A DNA stretch of 15,456 nucleotides from Octopus sinensis (Eukaryota): assembly GCF_006345805.1 (NCBI RefSeq), contig NW_021825522.1, forward strand, positions 1 to 15,456, read 5' to 3'. Made by a program: the position numbers and the translations under genes. Every line of letters starts with the position of its first letter. Within the stretch, counting starts at the first letter, position 1. This document shows positions 394-15,137 of the stretch, piece by piece. The notes under the pieces were generated by a model. It was not told the origin of the DNA, did no database searches, and saw only the letters and a list, made by a program, of their open reading frames with translations.

Positions 394-930
<537 letters not shown>

Positions 931-2406: not shown

Positions 2407-2452
2407 GTGTATATGCATGTTTCGGGAGTCCTTGCTCCTTCATCAGTACTAC
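2407..2452 (-). ncRNA. Minimal (PLE-type) hammerhead ribozyme-like motif, degenerate
   Basis: Minus strand reads gtagta-CTGATGA-A-GGAG-caagga-CTCC-C-GAAA-CATGCATA-tacac. Core boxes and a 4-bp stem II are present; stems I and III are weak. Confidence 0.55.
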
Positions 2453-2985: not shown

Positions 2986-3126
2986 TCTAACAAAGTGAAC
3001 AGCGCGCCAAAGTGAAGGCATTTGAAAGATACACAAAAATATAATCAGTTGGACTCCATGCATGCGAGACTCCGGTCAAACGTTTTTGCATCTAGTCCTG
3101 CAAATTGTATGTTCTATATTGACAGA

Positions 3127-3191
3127 CCATGCTGACGAGATTACAGTTTATCCTTGCGGATATTAATAATCGAAACTGATTCAGTACATGG
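3127..3191 (+). ncRNA. Canonical type I hammerhead ribozyme; predicted cleavage after GUA (A3186)
   Basis: Stem I CCATG(3127-31)/CATGG(3187-91). Core CTGACGA (3132-38). Stem II GATTA/TAATC with an inner TATCC-ttgc-GGATA hairpin. GAAA (3172-75). Stem III A-CTG-att-CAG-T, then A as the cleavage nucleotide. All core nucleotides and three stems are intact. Confidence 0.9.
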
Positions 3192-3502
3192 GTAATCATT
3201 TTTATTTCGTATATTTTCATTTGTCTTGCTTATTTTTAATGCTTTAGTTTTGTGCTGATTTTTTATTTGAGAACATATTCTTTGTGGAAAATAGCGATTT
3301 GACGTCTATATCTAGCATGTTGACGGTCCACTTTTAGTGGTCAGTCCTTTAAATTTTGTATGTAAAAATATTTTAATCTTCAGATTTTTTAATATGCTGG
3401 GCCACTGGTTTTAATTGATTAATATCAATTTCTACCTTATAAATTTTAAATTAATATATATATATATATATATATAATATAATATATATATATATATATA
3501 TT

Positions 3503-3534
<32 letters not shown>

Positions 3535-3826
3535 ATATATTATATATAGACATATATATATATAATTTAAAATTTAATAAGGGTAGAAATTGATATTAAT
3601 CAATTAAAACCAGTGGCCCAGCATATTAAAAAATCTGAAGATTAAAATATTTTTACATACAAAATTTAAAGGACTGACCACTAAAAGTGGACCGTCAACA
3701 TGCTAGATATAGACGTCAAATCGCTATTTTCCACAAAGAATATGTTCTCAAATAAAAAATCAGCACAAAACCAAAGCATTAAAAATAAGCAAGACAAATG
3801 AAAATATACGAAATAAAAATGATTAC

Positions 3827-3891
3827 CCATGTACTGAATCAGTTTCGATTATCAATATCCGCAAGGATAAACTGTAATCTCGTCAGCATGG
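3827..3891 (-). ncRNA. Canonical type I hammerhead ribozyme, mirror copy; predicted cleavage between 3832 and 3831
   Basis: Reverse complement of the 3127-3191 motif. The single difference (A>G) lies in the stem II internal region, outside the core. Confidence 0.9.
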
Positions 3892-3919
3892 TCTGTCAAT
3901 ATATATATATATATTATAT

Positions 3920-4153
3920 ATCAACAATCAAGGAACGGCCATGATAGGCCATTCACCCACTAGAAATAACAGCCAAAGCTTCAACCGCAAATAAAGATTA
4001 ATTCCGTAAACAGGAGAAAATTAAAAACATTTACCCTGTAATGTTTTTTAAATTTTCTCTGGTTTTACGGATTAATCTTTATTTGCGGTTGAAGCTTTGG
4101 CTGTTATTTCTAGTGGGTGCAATGGCCTATCATGGCCGTTCCTTGATGTTGAT
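3920..4153. repeat. Second foldback: ~115-bp arms with a 3-nt loop (cct, 4035-4037), MITE-like
   Basis: atcaac...gaacggccatgataggccatt...ctagaaataacagccaaagcttcaaccgcaaat is matched by its reverse complement at 4038-4153. Differences are mostly 1-bp indels. Confidence 0.92.
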
Positions 4154-4254
4154 GTTGAACTTTAAAATGGTCTATGACTATTTATTTTTTTCCCACTAGG
4201 CCGCTGGTGGTAAAAAGAATTTACAAAAATTTTTTTTTGCACACCCTATATTGA

Positions 4255-4519: not shown

Positions 4520-4566
4520 TACACACACACACACACACACACACAACACACACACACACACACACA

Positions 4567-4632
<66 letters not shown>
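4520..4632. repeat. (CA)n/(TA)n microsatellite
   Basis: Direct reading; another (TA)n lies at ~4257-4312. Confidence 0.95.
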
Positions 4633-4638
<6 letters not shown>

Positions 4639-4768
4639 ATTATGTATTTGTGTGAGAGTGCTCTTTCTTTTTTAAATACAAAAACCTTCCTGCTGGAGCC
4701 ATTCCCTTTTTCAGCTATTATGTATCTAGGGCTACATTATCCAATGTAACTTTAGAAAAAATTACAAT

Positions 4769-5127
4769 ATGTGGCTGTGTGGTAAGAAGTTTGTTCCCAA
4801 ACAATATGGTTCTGTGTTCAGTCCTAATGCGCGATACGTTGGGCAAGTGCCGGTGGATTTGGTAGACGGGAACATTTATATGTGTGTGTTTGTGTGCGTG
4901 TGTATATATATGTCTTTCTGTCTGTGTTTGTCCCTAACACTGCTTAACAACCGGGGCTGGTGTGTTTACGTCTCCGAAACTTAAAAGTTCATCAAAAGTT
5001 ACCGATAAGACATGTACCACGCTTTAAAAAAAACTAGTACTGGGGTCGATTAGCTTGACTGGAATTATTCAAGGCAGTGCCCCAGCATGGCCATATGATA
5101 ATGACTGAAACACTTAAATGATAAAAG
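4769..5127 (+). mobile_element. tRNA-derived SINE (family 1, resembling octopus CORE/OR-type), with internal (TG)n and 3' module; internally deleted
   Basis: A-box-like TGGCTGTGTGG (4772-82) and B-box-like GTTCAGTCC (4816-24). Homologous to in-window copies at 6195-6352 and 9516-9675 but lacks the segment after gggcaagtg. The family name is recalled knowledge. Confidence 0.8.
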
Positions 5128-5547: not shown

Positions 5548-5680
5548 GTGTGCGTGTGTGGGCGTGTGTATATGTATGTATTTCTGTCTGTGTTTGTCCC
5601 TACCACTACTTAACAACTGGGGCTGGTGTGTTAACGTCTCCGAAACATAAAAGTTCATCAAGATTTATCGATAATATATC
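5516..5680 (+). mobile_element. Partial copy of the family 1 SINE 3' module, preceded by (TG)n
   Basis: 5583-5675 aligns closely with 4918-5010 (tctgtctgtgtttgtccct...ggggctggtgtgtt...acgtctccgaaac...aaaagttcatcaa). Confidence 0.8.
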
Positions 5681-6106
5681 TATCACACTTAAAAATGCAG
5701 AATTCTCTTCATTTAGAAATAGAGGTTTAGAATTGGAAACTAACGTGAGACATGTATTATCAGAAATCAAAGATCTGATAACTATTGCACATCAAATCGA
5801 TTAAAATATAATGCATATAAAAATTGTTGTATATGGAACCACGCAATCTAAAGATGAATAATTATTGTTGTAAATAACATTTATCAAAAGAAAATTTTGT
5901 TTATAAGTGGAATCAATGTGTGAAATTATAAGAAGGCCGATGACGTGCCTGGCAGTACATTCCAAACGTTGGTGTCAGGTTTTGTATCTTTTTCTTAAGG
6001 ATTTATCGACTGATTAAAGACGGCGTCATTGTAATTTTTTGTGAAAATTGGTGAAATGGGCGGGTAAAAACATGATGAAACATATGTGTAAAACATGCAA
6101 ATATAC

Positions 6107-6352
6107 GTATGTCCATGTATGTATGCATGTATGTATGTATGTATGTATGTATGTATGTATGTATGTATGTATGTATGTATGTATGTATGTATTTACGACG
6201 GAGTTACGCGGTTTCCGCCTACTGAATTCACTTATAATAGCAATGGTAGGGATGAGGGTATCGCGGAATCATTTGACCCCAGTGCAACGCAGTGGGACTG
6301 AACCCGAAACTTCGTGCTTCCAAACTAAATTTCTTAACCACACAACGGCGCT
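6107..6352 (-). mobile_element. Old family 1 SINE copy with adjacent (TATG)n tract (6107-6192)
   Basis: Plus strand shows gcagtgggactgaacccgaaac...ttcttaaccacac, the reverse complement of the tRNA-like head. Confidence 0.7.
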
Positions 6353-6580: not shown

Positions 6581-6610
6581 TACACGTACATATATGTACA
6601 TGTATATATA

Positions 6611-6649
<39 letters not shown>

Positions 6650-6661
6650 CATACTATACAT

Positions 6662-6694
<33 letters not shown>

Positions 6695-6800
6695 TATATA
6701 TATAATATATATATATATATGTATATATATTGACACACACGCACACATATATATATACATATATACATACATATATATCTGTGTGCGCTTCTATATGTAT

Positions 6801-6859
<59 letters not shown>

Positions 6860-7519: not shown

Positions 7520-7556
7520 GTATGTACATACATATATGCTATTATGTATATATATA

Positions 7557-7631
<75 letters not shown>

Positions 7632-8039: not shown

Positions 8040-8262
8040 TACGTCATCATTGCGATCATCATCGTCGTCGTTACCATCGTCTTCAATATCATCATCATCA
8101 TCATCCTCATCGTCATCGTCAACAACATCATCGTCATCATCATCATCATTGTCATTATTGTCATCGTCAACATCATTTTCATCGGCGTCGTCATCGTCGT
8201 TATCGTCGTCATCGTCGTCGTTATCTTCGTCGACATCATCATTATCATTGTCCTTACCGTCG

Positions 8263-8294
<32 letters not shown>

Positions 8295-8564
8295 GTCATC
8301 GTCAACAACATCATCGTCATCATCATCATCATTGTCATTATTGTCATCGTCATCATCATCATCATCATCACCATCACCATCACCCTCACCATCACCTTCA
8401 GCAGCATCATTGTCAATATCATCATCACCATCATCATCACCATCACCCTAATCACCATCTTCAGCAGCATCATTGTCATTATCATCATCATCATCATCAT
8501 CATCATCATACTCATCATCATCAACATCATCATATTCAGCAGCAAACATCACCATCATCATCAG

Positions 8565-8597
<33 letters not shown>

Positions 8598-8800
8598 TAT
8601 TGTCATTATTGTCATCATCACCATCATCATCATCATTTTCGTCGTCGTCATTGTCGGAATCGTCGTCGTCTTTGTCGACATCATCATTATCATTGTCCTT
8701 ACCGTTGTCGCTGTCGTCATCATCATCATCATCATCGTAGTCGTCATCACCATCAACGTTTCCATCGTTGTCGTCGTGTTCGTCGCCGTTTCAGTCGTCA
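8040..8800. repeat. Long degenerate (CAT/CGT/CAC)n trinucleotide tract with internal block duplications
   Basis: Triplet periodicity throughout. It yields poly-H, poly-S, poly-I and poly-M ORFs in several frames. Confidence 0.95.
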
Positions 8801-9515: not shown

Positions 9516-9675
9516 GACTTCTTTTCAGTTTCCGCATTTCAAATTCACTCACAAGACTTTGGTCGGCCACAGACTTTAGTAGAAGACACATGACAAAGCT
9601 GCCACACAGTGGAACTGAACCCGGAACCAAGTAGTTGGAAAGCAAGCTTCTTACCACACAGCCATGCCTGTGCCT
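9516..9675 (-). mobile_element. Family 1 SINE copy (tRNA head plus CORE-like body)
   Basis: Minus strand reads ggcacaggcatggctgtgtggtaagaagcttgc...gggttcagttccactg...gtgtcttctactaaagtctgtggccgaccaaagtcttgtgagtgaatttg. Confidence 0.85.
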
Positions 9676-10110: not shown

Positions 10111-10523
10111 TGTAAAGGTATGTTCTAAGATTAACGCAAAGATATCACGTTTTCAATAAACCATATTATCATTACTTCCCGTTTTTTCTCCTCCCTTATA
10201 TTCATATTAATCAATGCCCAGAACCACAGATATCAGGAGAAGAACAAAGAAACATATTTCCTGCTTTTTTCCTCTTTTTCTGTCATTTTTTCTCTTCTGT
10301 CGGGAAGATTTAATTAAAAGTTGCCAGATCAAAAACAAAAAGACATAAACCTGGAAATACGAACGCAAAACAAAGAGCTTTCAGTTTAGCCTATAGGTAC
10401 GTCGTTGATTAAATATATATTGTAAATATTTTATTTGTCGGATTTTAATGTCTGAAAGAAAAGTCTTGAAAAGAAGATAGTTTTTGCATATTATAGTAGA
10501 ATGTATAGAATCAATATTTTCAT

Positions 10524-11545
10524 AGAATTCAAGGTGGCGAGTTGGAAAGGATTGTAAGGACGCCAGACCAAATGCTTAGCGGCATTTTATCTGCCTTTAC
10601 GTTCTGAGTTCAAATTCCGCCGAGGTTGACTTTGCCTTTGATCCTTTCGGGGTCGATAAATTAAGTACCAGTTACACACTGGGGTCGATATAATCAACTT
10701 AATCCGTTTGTCTGTCCTTGTTTCTCCCTCTGTGTGTAGTCCCTTGTGGGTAGTAAAGAAATAGGTATTTCATCCGTCCTTACGTTCTGAGTTCAAATTC
10801 CACCAAGGCTGGCTTTGCCTTTCATCCTTTCGGGGGTCGATAAATTAAGTACCAGTTGCGTATTGGGGTCGATCTAATCGACTGATACCCCTCCCCCAAA
10901 ATTTCGGGCTTTGTGCCTAAAGTAGAAAAGTATATTTTAAGGCGGTGAGCTGGCAGAAACGTTAGCAAACTGGGCGAATTGCTTAGCGATATTTCATCCG
11001 ACCTTACGTTCTGAATTCAAATTCCGCCGAGGTCAGCTTTGCCTTTTATCCTTTCGGGGTGGATAAATTAAGTAGTAGTTGCGTACTGGGGTCGATCTAA
11101 TCGATTGACACCCCTCCTCCAAAAGTTGGGGCTTTGTGCCTGGAGTAGAAAATAATATTTTCGTAGAATTTAAGGTGGCGAGTTGGTAAGGATCGTTAGC
11201 ACGCCGGGTAAAATGCTTAGCGGCATTTCATTCGTCTTTACGTTTCTATTTCAAATTATGTTGAGGTCGACGTTGCATTTCATTCTTCGTGGTCGATAAA
11301 ATAAAGTACCAGTTCTGCAATGATGTCGATGTCATCAACTTAACCTCTTCCCCCCGAACTCACTGGCCTCGTGCCAAAACTTGAAGCCAATTTTATACCT
11401 TTTTACTTTAATACAATTGTTTGTAATTTTAAAATTGAGTTCAAATTCCAACGAGGCCGACATTGCCTTTCATCCTTTCGGGGTCGATTAAATATGTCCC
11501 AACAGAGTACTGAGATGTATGTAATCGACAAATCCTGTCCCATAG
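10524..11545 (+). mobile_element. Head-to-tail array of five family 2 tRNA-derived SINE copies (~10524-10768, 10769-10938, 10939-11160, 11165-11392, 11436-11545)
   Basis: Copies share gagttcaaattcc (B-box-like) followed by ttgcctttcatcctttcggggtcgataaattaagtaccag, with varying decay. Copies 1, 3 and 4 retain the aaggyggygagytgg head. Confidence 0.9.
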
Positions 11546-11850: not shown

Positions 11851-12053
11851 AGGCAAAAAGGCAACAATTTTAAGAAAAAGTAGTTTTAGATGATTTCACA
11901 TCTATCCCAGCACTTCAATCGTGCTTTATTTTATCGACCCCGAAAAGAGGAAAGGCAAAGCTGATCTTTGCCTAATTTGAACCCAAATCCTAAAAATTCT
12001 GCAATTCACTTTTTCGATGCACTACTTACTCTGCCAGCTTATCACCGCCTTTG
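11851..12053 (-). mobile_element. Degenerate family 2 SINE copy, opposite orientation
   Basis: Plus strand shows ttttatcgacccCGAAAagaggaaaggcaaag...aatttgaaccc...ctctgccagcttatcaccgcctt. Confidence 0.75.
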
Positions 12054-13090: not shown

Positions 13091-13425
13091 AGATCTAAGT
13101 AAATATTTTCTGTCGCTCGGGCAAAGAAGCGCTTGCTTTAGATATGAAACCTTGCCACGGTAATCATTTTGCAGATCTGGGTAAATGTTCTTTTCTGTTG
13201 CTCGGGCAAAGAAGCGCTAGCTTTAGATATGAAACCTTGCCACGGTAATCATTTTGCAGATCTGGGTAAATGTTCTTTTCTGTTGCTCGGGCAAAGAAGC
13301 GCTTGCTTTAGATATGAAACCGTGCCACGGTAATCATTTTGCAGATCTGGGTAAATGTTCTTTTCTGTTGCTCGGGCAAAGAAGCGCTTGCTTTAGATAC
13401 GAAACCGTGCCACGGTAATTACTTT
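13089..13425. repeat. Minisatellite, 85-bp unit, about 4 copies
   Basis: gcagatct starts at 13089, 13171, 13256 and 13341. The unit is gcagatctgggtaaatgttcttttctgttgctcgggcaaagaagcgcttgctttagatatgaaaccttgccacggtaatcatttt; the first unit is 82 bp and more diverged. Confidence 0.95.
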
Positions 13426-14581: not shown

Positions 14582-15137
14582 GGAGTGAGAGAGAACTGCG
14601 TGCCATCAAAGTGACACTGAGGTAAAATATACAAAGCCCAGTATACCCACCATGACTACCCGTCTGATAAGGGTGCACCAGGCACATGCATCACAACCAA
14701 ATGTGCGCGACATGGTGATCTCATATCAAGATAAATAGCGCATGACCTTGCAGGTGGGGCCCAGTTAGAATGTTCTTCTGGTCAAGTAGCCCATCCCGCT
14801 CAAAAAGATCCCTGAATAAGGATTGTTTAAGGATGTTGAACGAAACACCCATGTTTCCAAAGGTGAATTATCCAAACCCCCAAGAATTCCTTTCAACACA
14901 CGGCTATGATGTTCCCCCGTTACTTCCGCTCGCGGTCAGAGATGCACATATCATCAGCCACTAAAGGACTTGGTCAAATGGTTATGGTCAAACTGACAAG
15001 CAAATCTGTGGTATTGAGCAGAATATTTGCTGTAGCCCATCTTTTATACCAAGACAAAACAATGTACATGATAACACTCCCACTCAGTTAATATCAGAAG
15101 TCATGAGAGCCACTGTCTGGTACTGCATCAGGGCATT
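14581..15137 (+). mobile_element. ~555-bp interspersed repeat ending in an (ATT)n tail, probably a LINE 3' end or non-autonomous retroelement, inserted into an (ATT)n array
   Basis: More GC-rich block bounded on both sides by (ATT)n. It resembles an abundant octopus repeat as recalled. No intact ORF. Confidence 0.7.

What the first reader, a model, noticed from the sequence alone, without database searches (positions are those of the whole stretch)
3115..3903. ~790-bp foldback with an intact hammerhead ribozyme near each end, on opposite strands, pointing inward
Seen: ~340-bp arms differing by 2 substitutions and two 1-bp indels, joined tail-to-tail through (TA)n, each arm starting with a complete type I HHR. 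Known: HHRs in animal genomes occur in PLE pseudo-LTRs and in retrozymes, usually as direct repeats that excise a monomer or circle, and PLEs can form inverted terminal arrangements. Inference: transcription from either side would self-cleave near the entry end and then fold into a ~270-bp dsRNA hairpin, making this a strand-symmetric self-processing element and possible endo-siRNA source. It may be an undescribed inverted 'foldback retrozyme' or a PLE-derived MITE.
Basis: partly seen in the sequence, partly recalled or inferred. Interest (0 to 1): 0.88.

Follow-up and report, generated by a model that had tools for sequence, protein, structure and literature searches.

The report
Inverted pair of hammerhead-ribozyme repeats
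A 789-bp palindrome in a microsatellite-rich animal genome (probably an octopus) consists of two mirror-image copies of a ~334-bp non-coding repeat, each starting with an intact-looking self-cleaving hammerhead ribozyme; it is most likely a known kind of ribozyme-carrying retroelement folded back on itself at a (TA)n tract, a curiosity rather than a new kind of element.

Summary
Window 3115-3903 is one near-perfect palindrome. The arms are 99% complementary, and their homology runs through the inner (TA)n tracts to a ~13-nt TG loop centred at 3509. Each outer end carries a complete type I hammerhead (HHR) core with three helices, facing inward. Predicted cleavage is at 3186|3187 (+) and 3832|3831 (-). 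A motif this good is expected about 4e-5 times per window by chance.

Caveats: no Rfam hammerhead model matches, even at E<=10, and I found no related sequence in any searchable collection. There is therefore no covariation, copy census or expression evidence.

The arm (334 bp, 29% GC, non-coding, HHR-bearing, embedded in (TA)n) fits the metazoan non-LTR retrozyme / SMalpha-like SINE class. It fails the defining direct-tandem arrangement. Its geometry (HHRs at the 5' ends facing inward, tails meeting in the middle) is the reverse of what Penelope-like inverted insertions should give.

The best reading is a solo HHR retroelement copy in a (TA)n microsatellite, recently palindromised by one fold-back duplication through the self-complementary TA tracts. 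The dsRNA/siRNA idea is physically plausible but untested. A second, unrelated perfect palindrome lies directly next door, so palindromes here are not specific to the ribozyme.

The parts
3115..3903 (.). Whole palindrome (789 bp), symmetry centre at 3509
   Evidence: It folds as one hairpin at -590 kcal/mol, z = -49.
3120..3453 (+). Left arm: 334-bp repeat unit in ribozyme-sense orientation (TGACAG...AAATTA), 29% GC, non-coding
   Evidence: No other copy in the window.
3565..3898 (-). Right arm: the same unit in ribozyme sense on the minus strand
   Evidence: 98.6% over 349 nt.
3120..3198 (+). Left type I hammerhead motif. Helix I 3127-3131/3187-3191 plus distal 3120-3122/3196-3198. CUGACGA 3132-3138. 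Helix II 3139-3143/3167-3171 plus distal 3149-3153/3158-3162. GAAA 3172-3175. Helix III 3175-3178/3182-3185 with AUU loop. Predicted cleavage 3186|3187.
   Evidence: hammerhead structure -14.4 vs MFE -15.4 kcal/mol. Not recognised by Rfam.
3820..3898 (-). Right type I hammerhead motif, mirror of the left. CUGACGA 3886-3880. Predicted cleavage 3832|3831. One difference from the left copy (G instead of A at the position mirroring 3165, in the helix II internal loop).
3454..3500 (.). Inner (TA)n tract of the left arm. It carries the phase-shift TATAATATA, which is mirrored in the right tract.
3501..3513 (.). Asymmetric centre / loop TTTGTGTGTGTGT
   Evidence: the repeat finder I10 shows arms 3435-3501/3516-3582 with 14 nt between them.
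3514..3564 (.). Inner (TA)n tract of the right arm. Same length and same irregularity in register with the left tract.
3899..3921 (.). Flanking (TA)n on the right. The left flank keeps only TATAT (3115-3119). Together they look like the remains of the (TA)n tract that hosts the element.

Best explanation
Each arm is a copy of one ~334-bp, AT-rich, non-coding, SINE-like retroelement. It starts with a type I hammerhead ribozyme and ends in a (TA)n tract. It belongs to the class of metazoan HHR repeats (non-LTR retrozymes, SMalpha-like elements), which are presumed to be mobilised by Penelope-like reverse transcriptases.

A solo copy sat in a (TA)n microsatellite. Because (TA)n is its own reverse complement, a nascent or broken DNA end in the downstream TA tract could snap back onto the upstream TA tract across the short TG run. 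It would then copy the element backwards to the TATAT at the element's outer edge, and rejoin the remaining (TA)n. One such event gives the observed palindrome with a ~13-nt loop.

The event is recent: 0.6% divergence between arms, roughly under 1 My on an octopus-like clock, or younger-looking through gene conversion.

Consequences, all inferred:
- Read-through transcription from either side would make an RNA whose 5' hammerhead can cut after A3186 (+) or after position 3832 (-). This can only happen before the far arm end is transcribed and sequesters the ribozyme.
- The rest folds into a ~267-bp near-perfect duplex plus a TA stem.
- Such a duplex would be a natural substrate for dsRNA pathways (Dicer, ADAR).

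What is shown: the anatomy, the motif integrity and the folding energetics. What is inferred: the retroelement nature, the fold-back origin, and any transcription or cleavage.
For: 1. Complete HHR core and three helices at both ends. Chance expectation is 4e-5 per window.
2. Helix III plus its loop is self-complementary at 10 of 11 positions, as described for metazoan type I HHRs (PMC4209133).
3. Unit size of 334 bp and 29% GC match the published description of metazoan HHR repeats: 150-450 bp and <45-50% GC (PMC7229834). They also match the 335-bp SMalpha SINE-like element (PMC8490949).
4. The element is embedded in TA repeats at both outer ends and in the centre. Microsatellite/(TA)n and AT-rich targeting is documented for Penelope-like elements (PMC8557442; PMC11167929).
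5. The host looks cephalopod. Cephalopods have recently active Penelope families and Rfam hammerhead hits.
6. Arm homology continues through the inner TA tracts, with the same length and the same phase-shift in register, up to a 13-nt loop. This is what one fold-back event predicts. Two independent insertions would need to land 13 nt apart.
7. The flanks on the two sides are different unique sequences and the centre is asymmetric. That argues against a simple read-chimera artefact.
Against: 1. No Rfam hammerhead model matches, even at E<=10 on a 95-nt slice.
2. No second copy of the arm in 15 kb and none in the metagenome, viral, prokaryote or protein-derived collections. Neither repeat-family status nor HHR covariation is shown.
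3. A hammerhead at the extreme 5' end is awkward for a retro-copied unit. Cleaved RNA would lose most of the ribozyme, so the template must have been uncleaved.
4. The arm RNA is not 'highly self-paired' as retrozyme circles are (z = -0.7).
5. There are no pol III A/B boxes in the arm and no RT/EN coding remnants nearby.
6. The adjacent unrelated palindrome fits a TA-targeting MITE landscape as well as it fits a TA-mediated fold-back habit.
Confidence: 0.5

Rival explanations
1. The ~780-bp palindrome is itself the mobile unit. It would be a MITE or foldback-type DNA element (TTGACAG...CTGTCAA, TA target duplication) or a true 'foldback retrozyme' family, with the hammerheads built into both termini.
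For: It meets the descriptive MITE features: <800 bp, AT-rich, non-coding, long terminal inverted repeats, and TA at both ends. A second complete palindrome of different sequence abuts the same (TA)n, as expected if TA-targeting hairpin elements pile into TA tracts. Tc1/mariner families are numerous and recently active in Octopus vulgaris (PMC13282606). The inward-facing geometry needs no special explanation under this model.
Against: No second copy is available. The TA duplication cannot be told apart from the TA repeat itself. All described genomic HHR repeat families are retroelement-linked, and full-text searches found no HHR-in-MITE report. It would also require a transposase to recognise termini that are a ribozyme.
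Confidence: 0.17
2. Two separate insertions (or one coupled Penelope-type event) of the same active HHR retroelement into one (TA)n/(TG)n microsatellite, in opposite orientations, tail-to-tail.
For: PLEs make complex tandem/inverted insertions and prefer microsatellites. The PAc PLE nicks AT-rich DNA, including sites next to its own copies, and extends both strands. Each arm has its own TA tail.
Against: When both strands of one target are primed, the 3' ends (and, in PAc, the HHR, whose cut site at +26 lies ~90 nt upstream of the RT start at +111-118) end up at the outside, head-to-head. Here the 5' ends with the HHR are outside. Two independent hits would have to land 13 nt apart and carry TA tails of identical length and irregularity. 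None of the many other (TA)n tracts in the window carries a copy.
Confidence: 0.13
3. The hammerhead is a chance look-alike inside an ordinary palindromic repeat, and the ribozyme reading is wrong.
For: No Rfam hammerhead hit at any threshold tried. The MFE fold pairs the core CUGA with UCAG instead of forming helix III. There is no covariation or activity data. About 7 motifs this good are expected by chance in a 2.7-Gb genome, and this window was picked because of the motif.
Against: Expectation is 4e-5 per window. The motif sits exactly at the end of the repeat unit. Both helix I and helix II continue into distal stems. Helix III is near-palindromic. The hammerhead structure is only 1 kcal/mol above the MFE. 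Unit size and GC match known HHR repeats.
Confidence: 0.1
4. Assembly or sequencing artefact (a foldback chimera collapsed into the contig).
For: Palindromes around low-complexity TA tracts are classic problem regions. Some arm differences are 1-bp indels in short homopolymers, a long-read error pattern. PLE-like structures are noted to cause assembly trouble.
Against: The palindrome is bounded, with different unique flanks on each side. The centre is asymmetric. The arms differ by two transitions. A second bounded palindrome lies next to it.
Confidence: 0.06

Closest known systems
Metazoan non-LTR retrozymes (type I HHR tandem repeats; Cervera & de la Pena 2020, PMC7229834)
   Same: Type I hammerhead, unit of a few hundred bp (334 here vs 150-450), low GC (29% vs <45-50%), non-coding, invertebrate host that also carries Penelope-like elements.
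   Different: Retrozymes are direct tandem arrays, so two same-sense HHRs excise a monomer that is circularised. Here the two HHRs are on opposite strands, so no monomer or circle can be excised from one transcript. The arm RNA is not unusually self-paired. Solo monomers are known, but inverted pairs are not described in the papers I could search.
SMalpha / Sjalpha SINE-like retroposons of schistosomes (Ferbeyre 1998; Laha 2000; cited in PMC8490949)
   Same: ~335-bp dispersed non-coding element carrying a type I hammerhead.
   Different: No sequence similarity was tested (sequences not at hand). No pol III A/B boxes in the arm. Different phylum. Palindromic arrangement.
Penelope-like element pseudo-LTRs with HHRs, and PLE tandem/inverted insertions (PMC4209133, PMC8557442, PMC11167929)
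   Same: HHR inside a terminal repeat that can be direct or inverted. Short helix I (5 bp) and long helix II. Insertion in AT-rich/(TA)n DNA. Inverted structures are a PLE hallmark.
   Different: No RT/GIY-YIG ORF in 15 kb. The HHR has a real helix III and no unpaired base before stem II, so it is not the PLE 'minimal' type, and no min-HHR occurs elsewhere in the window. PLE inverted copies are expected head-to-head with their 3' ends outside, whereas here the 5' HHR ends are outside.
MITEs / Foldback (FB-like) DNA elements and hairpin-RNA (hpRNA) loci
   Same: Sub-kb AT-rich palindrome flanked by TA. It would give a long hairpin RNA if transcribed, as hpRNA/endo-siRNA loci do (established knowledge, not tested here).
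   Different: No family, transposase relative or unambiguous target duplication can be shown. No MITE is known to carry hammerheads in its termini (searches found none).

Membership tests
Hammerhead ribozyme, type I | Invariant core C3-U4-G5-A6-N7-G8-A9, G12-A13-A14, A15.1-U16.1, H17 not G | tested here: met
   CUGACGA 3132-3138, GAAA 3172-3175, A3175-U3185, A3186. The mirror copy is at 3886-3832.
Hammerhead ribozyme, type I | Three helices around the core, helix I open, helices II and III closed by loops, G10.1-C11.1 pair | tested here: met
   Helices of 5/5/4 bp plus distal stems on I and II. G3139-C3171 is the 10.1-11.1 pair. The structure is -14.4 kcal/mol against an MFE of -15.4.
Hammerhead ribozyme, type I | Match to curated covariance models (Rfam Hammerhead_1 and relatives) | tested here: not met
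   No hammerhead hit at gathering score or at E<=10 on 921 nt and on 95 nt. The ~22-nt extension of helix II is a likely reason, but I could not test that.
Hammerhead ribozyme, type I | Helices supported by compensatory changes among homologues | not testable with these tools
   No homologue found. The two arms differ at one non-helical HHR position only.
Hammerhead ribozyme, type I | Site-specific self-cleavage | not testable with these tools
   Needs an in vitro transcription assay.
Metazoan non-LTR retrozyme | Type I HHR in a 150-450-bp, low-GC, non-coding unit | tested here: met
   334 bp, 28.7% GC. Only short, non-conserved ORFs. Criteria from PMC7229834.
Metazoan non-LTR retrozyme | Direct tandem repeats giving at least two same-sense HHRs, so that a monomer is excised and circularised | tested here: not met
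   Only two HHRs in 15.4 kb, on opposite strands. No direct copy of the arm.
Metazoan non-LTR retrozyme | Monomer RNA predicted to be highly self-paired | tested here: not met
   Arm MFE -61.5 kcal/mol, z = -0.70; 20 of 100 shuffles fold as well.
Metazoan non-LTR retrozyme | Expressed as circular RNA | not testable with these tools
   No transcriptome access.
Penelope-like element (pLTR or inverted insertion) | Associated RT plus GIY-YIG ORF, or sequence identity to a PLE pLTR | tested here: not met
   No long non-repetitive ORF. No Pfam hit in the 10 best ORF pieces. A non-autonomous derivative would not need the ORF, and identity to a PLE of the host could not be tested.
Penelope-like element (pLTR or inverted insertion) | Inverted copies joined head-to-head, with 3' ends (RT start, near the HHR) at the outside | tested here: not met
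   Here the HHR-sense 5' ends are outside and the TA tails meet in the centre. The expectation is derived from PAc in vitro data and PLE structure.
Penelope-like element (pLTR or inverted insertion) | Insertion into AT-rich or microsatellite DNA | tested here: met
   TATAT on the left, (TA)~11 on the right, (TA)n in the centre.
MITE / foldback DNA transposon | Terminal inverted repeats, <800 bp, AT-rich, non-coding | tested here: met
   779 bp between 3120 and 3898, 99% arms, 29% GC.
MITE / foldback DNA transposon | Target-site duplication of fixed length | tested here: inconclusive
   TA or TATA is present on both sides but lies inside a TA repeat.
MITE / foldback DNA transposon | Many copies with the same termini, related to an autonomous transposon | not testable with these tools
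   The source genome is not searchable here. No copy in the window.
SMalpha-like SINE | Internal pol III A and B boxes | tested here: not met
   Only a 2-mismatch A-box-like site (3398-3408) and no B box in the arm. Window-wide counts are at chance level.

The most novel reading that the evidence does not exclude
The ~780-bp palindrome is the transposing unit of an undescribed family: a foldback element whose two termini each encode an inward-facing hammerhead. A transcript entering from either side is trimmed at its 5' end and yields a defined long hairpin RNA. This would be a ribozyme-delimited source of endo-siRNAs, or of ADAR substrates in a cephalopod.
Probability: 0.12. Interest if true: 0.75.

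Novelty: new member of a known kind. Interest (0 to 1): 0.36.

Why it matters
If the arm proves to be a repeat family, it adds a cephalopod-type member to the hammerhead-bearing SINE-like/retrozyme class. Its ribozyme has a long helix II extension, and current Rfam models miss it. Model-based censuses, such as the 235 Hammerhead_1 hits reported for the giant squid, may therefore undercount such elements.

The locus also illustrates a general point. Any element flanked by (TA)n is flanked by sequence that is at once a direct and an inverted repeat, which makes it prone to palindromisation.

Only if many genomic copies share the palindromic form would this become a new variant: a ribozyme-terminated foldback element producing defined hairpin RNAs. 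That would interest the ribozyme, transposon and small-RNA/RNA-editing fields.

Tried and rejected
1. Rfam at gathering score on the whole window, and at E<=10 on 921 nt and 95 nt. No hammerhead hit, only microsatellite-driven miRNA noise.
2. Exact/degenerate pattern scans for this HHR in metagenome, viral and prokaryote genome contigs. The only result was 5 metagenome loci, L001-L005. On inspection these are chance matches inside prokaryotic coding DNA and were discarded.
3. 'ORF trick' to reach other genomic copies through the protein collection. The 49-aa ORF of the right arm gave no homologue. It is interrupted in the left arm, so it is not coding. An exact look-up of 10 window ORFs found none in the collection, so no independent assembly of the locus could be fetched.
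4. Other HHRs in the window:
   - A CUGAUGA...GAAA site at 2446-2420 (-) fails at position 16.1 and in helices I and III.
   - Sites at 14957, 14469 and 1371 (-) fail the helix tests.
   - A PLE-type minimal-HHR descriptor found nothing.
5. The 85-bp tandem repeat at 13106-13419 shares GGTAATCATTTT with the arm and has a GAAAC-hairpin-UA look. It lacks any CUGANGA even with one mismatch, so it was rejected as an HHR.
6. Pol III A/B boxes are not present in the arm.
7. The sigma-70-like 'TTGACA' hits at the arm ends are irrelevant for a eukaryote and fewer than in shuffles.
8. Pfam on the 10 least repetitive ORF pieces gave nothing.
9. Literature searches for HHR with MITE, or with head-to-head arrangement, found no description of an HHR-terminated foldback. 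Lunse et al. 2017 is not held.
Full report
**The observation**

The region 3115-3903 is the longest inverted repeat in the window. The repeat finder reports arms 3115-3436 and 3582-3903, 322 nt, 99% complementary. Alignment of the left arm with the reverse complement of the right arm shows two substitutions in the unique part, at 3165 and 3247. Both are A in the left arm and G in the right arm when read in ribozyme sense. There are also single-base indels near the inner ends.

A pairwise alignment of the inner ends shows that the homology does not stop at the (TA)n. The two inner TA tracts have the same length (~49 nt) and the same phase-shift irregularity (TATAATATA) in register. Symmetry holds up to a 13-nt TTTGTGTGTGTGT centre, with the symmetry centre at 3509. 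The whole 789 bp is therefore one palindrome with a short asymmetric loop. As RNA it folds into a single hairpin of -590 kcal/mol, against -146 for shuffles.

The non-TA part of the element runs from TGACAG at 3120 to CTGTCA at 3898. It is flanked by TATAT on the left and by (TA)~11 on the right.

**The hammerheads**

Reading the sequence and scanning with a helix-aware descriptor gives exactly two hits in the 15.4-kb window, one per arm and on opposite strands. For the left copy:
- Helix I is 3127-3131/3187-3191.
- The core is CUGACGA at 3132-3138.
- Helix II is 3139-3143/3167-3171, with the conserved G10.1-C11.1 pair.
- GAAA is at 3172-3175.
- Helix III is A3175-U3185 plus three pairs, closed by an AUU loop.
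- H17 is A3186.

Cleavage is predicted between 3186 and 3187, and on the minus strand between 3832 and 3831. Helix I and helix II each continue past an internal loop into a distal stem, of 3 bp and 5 bp with a UUGC loop.

The hammerhead secondary structure costs -14.4 kcal/mol, only 1 kcal/mol above the MFE of the 81-mer. The MFE instead pairs the core CUGA with UCAG of helix III. Helix III plus its loop (ACUGAUUCAGU) is self-complementary at 10 of 11 positions. Published descriptions of metazoan type I hammerheads connect this trait with activity as dimers (PMC4209133).

The single difference between the two ribozyme copies lies in the internal loop of helix II.

**Is the motif more than chance?**

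- With a lax descriptor (helices >=4/3/3), 2 of 400 dinucleotide shuffles of the window gave a hit.
- 40 Mb of first-order Markov sequence gave one lax hit and none as good as observed.
- An analytic estimate for helices >=5/5/4 gives 4e-5 per window, or about 7 per 2.7-Gb genome.

The motif is therefore very unlikely to be chance in this window. Motifs this good do occur a handful of times by chance in a genome of this size, and this window was picked because of it. Against chance, the motif starts exactly at the first base of the repeated unit, and the unit has the size and composition of known hammerhead repeats.

The main caveat is that no Rfam hammerhead model matches at the gathering score, or at E<=10 on 921 nt or on a 95-nt slice. 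The long helix II extension probably explains this, but I could not test that.

**Surroundings and host**

- The window is 35% GC and dense with (TA)n, (TG)n and tetranucleotide microsatellites.
- It has no tRNA genes.
- It has no convincing ORFs and no Pfam hits in the ten least repetitive ORF pieces.
- tRNA-like SINE fragments at ~4760-4870 and ~9610-9665 resemble, from my memory only, the abundant octopus SINE. I treat 'octopus-like cephalopod' as a lead, not a result.
- Cephalopods have recently active Penelope families (30 families in O. vulgaris; PMC13282606). 235 Rfam Hammerhead_1 hits were reported in the giant squid (PMC6962438).
- Immediately to the right, sharing the (TA)n at 3899-3921, lies a second, unrelated, near-perfect palindrome at 3918-4155 (-174 kcal/mol, z = -28). 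Palindromic structure at this locus is not specific to the ribozyme element.

**Relatives elsewhere**

None could be found.
- The arm has no other copy in the window.
- Pattern scans of metagenome, viral and prokaryotic genome collections were empty or gave only chance hits in bacterial coding DNA.
- The arm's 49-aa ORF has no homologue among predicted proteins.
- None of ten window ORFs is in the protein collection, so no independent assembly of the locus could be retrieved.

Everything that depends on a copy census, covariation, orthologous sites or expression is therefore untested.

**What it is**

The arm is 334 bp, 28.7% GC, non-coding, headed by a type I hammerhead and embedded in TA repeats. 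This fits the published description of metazoan hammerhead repeats: non-LTR retrozymes of 150-450 bp, <45-50% GC, type I HHR (PMC7229834). Solo monomers are also known. It also fits the 335-bp SMalpha SINE-like retroposons (PMC8490949). These elements are thought to depend on Penelope-like elements. PLEs favour microsatellite and AT-rich targets and generate tandem and inverted structures.

Membership as a retrozyme proper fails on two defining features:
- There are no direct tandem, same-sense hammerheads that would release a monomer.
- The monomer RNA is not unusually self-paired (z = -0.7).

**How the palindrome arose**

The Penelope-type route does not fit the geometry. In the one PLE studied in vitro:
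- Reverse transcription starts 111-118 nt into the ORF.
- The HHR cut site is at +26.
- Both target strands are nicked and extended.

That predicts inverted copies joined head-to-head, with their 3' ends, and hence outward-facing hammerheads, at the outside. This matches the 'inverted 5'-truncated copy at the 5' end' described for PLEs. Here the hammerheads sit at the extreme outer ends facing inward, and the TA 'tails' meet in the middle.

Two independent insertions would have to land 13 nt apart and carry TA tails of identical length and irregularity. None of the many other TA tracts in the window carries a copy.

A single DNA-level fold-back accounts for all of this:
- (TA)n is its own reverse complement.
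- A 3' end in the TA tract downstream of a solo element can snap back across the short TG run onto the TA tract next to the element.
- It then copies the element backwards.
- At the TATAT that bounds the element's outer edge, it re-anneals to the remaining (TA)n.

The arms differ by 0.6%. On the rate implied by the O. vulgaris repeat study (JC 0.09 for about 25 My), that is under about 1 My. Gene conversion between arms would make it look younger than it is. This origin is inference.

**How it would behave**

This section is inferred; nothing here is shown. If read-through transcription enters from either side, the sense hammerhead is made first and can cut after A3186 (or after position 3832 on the minus strand). 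The remaining RNA pairs 3187-3453 with 3565-3831, a 267-bp duplex with one mismatch and two or three bulges, extended by the TA stem.

Two points temper the 'self-processing' idea:
- The other ribozyme copy in the same transcript is antisense. A hammerhead that relies on dimerisation gets no partner in cis.
- Once the far end of the second arm is transcribed, it can pair perfectly with the ribozyme and lock it in a duplex. Cleavage is confined to the time needed to transcribe ~700 nt.

A long perfect duplex would be a plausible Dicer or ADAR substrate. There is no transcript, small-RNA or editing evidence.

**Rivals**

- The palindrome may itself be the mobile unit (MITE/foldback family, 0.17). 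It meets the descriptive MITE criteria, and the neighbouring palindrome fits a TA-targeting landscape. No copies can be counted and no hammerhead-bearing MITE is described.
- Two insertions (0.13).
- A chance hammerhead (0.10).
- An assembly artefact (0.06). The different unique flanks, the asymmetric centre and the two transitions argue against the artefact.

**Verdict**

The locus is best filed as a new member of the hammerhead-bearing SINE-like/retrozyme class in an unusual, probably accidental, palindromic configuration.

Interest is moderate (0.36). It is a neat single locus with an Rfam-invisible hammerhead variant, and its more exciting reading (a foldback ribozyme element family, probability about 0.12) is directly testable by a genome census.

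Noticed in passing
window 3918-4155: A second, unrelated, near-perfect palindrome with ~115-nt arms and an 18-nt loop (RNA fold -174 kcal/mol, z = -28). It lies directly next to the hammerhead foldback and shares the (TA)n at 3899-3921. It is MITE-like and has no hammerhead motif.
   Followed up: partly
window 3165 and 3247 (mirror 3853 and 3771): Both substitutions between the arms are A (left) versus G (right) in ribozyme sense. That is the direction expected for A-to-I-edited RNA copied back to DNA, but two sites are far too few to conclude anything.
   Followed up: no
window 13106-13419: An 85-bp tandem repeat, 3.7 copies at 97%. Its unit contains GAAAC, a 4-bp hairpin, then UA, and shares the 12-mer GGTAATCATTTT with the arm just 3' of the cleavage site. 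It has no CUGANGA even with one mismatch, so it is not a hammerhead.
   Followed up: yes
window 10500-11530 and 11926-11994: A degenerate tandem array of a ~220-bp unit (77-86% between copies), with an inverted fragment of the same unit ~400 bp downstream.
   Followed up: no
window ~4760-4870 (+), ~9610-9665 (-), ~6290-6305 (-): tRNA-like SINE fragments with A-box-like TGGCTGTGTGG and B-box-like GGTTCAGTYCC. From memory they resemble the abundant octopus SINE. This is the only clue to the host, and it is unverified.
   Followed up: partly
window 4882-5029 vs 5548-5695: A direct duplication of ~148 bp at 87% identity. Each copy follows a (TG)n/(TA)n tract and may be the 3' part of another dispersed repeat.
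   Followed up: no
window 2420-2446 (-): A hammerhead near-miss, CUGAUGA-AGGAG...CUCC-C-GAAAC-AUGCAU. The core and a 4-bp helix II are present, but position 16.1 is not U and helices I and III fail. Judged to be chance.
   Followed up: yes
window 8055-8636: A very long imperfect (ATC)n trinucleotide array of ~194 copies. It creates spurious long ORFs in several frames.
   Followed up: no
window 402-499, 4521-4633, 6590-6837, 7543-7631: Compound (TA)n(TG)n / (AC)n(AT)n microsatellites recur throughout the window. The TA-TG-TA centre of the foldback is therefore an ordinary local sequence type.
   Followed up: no
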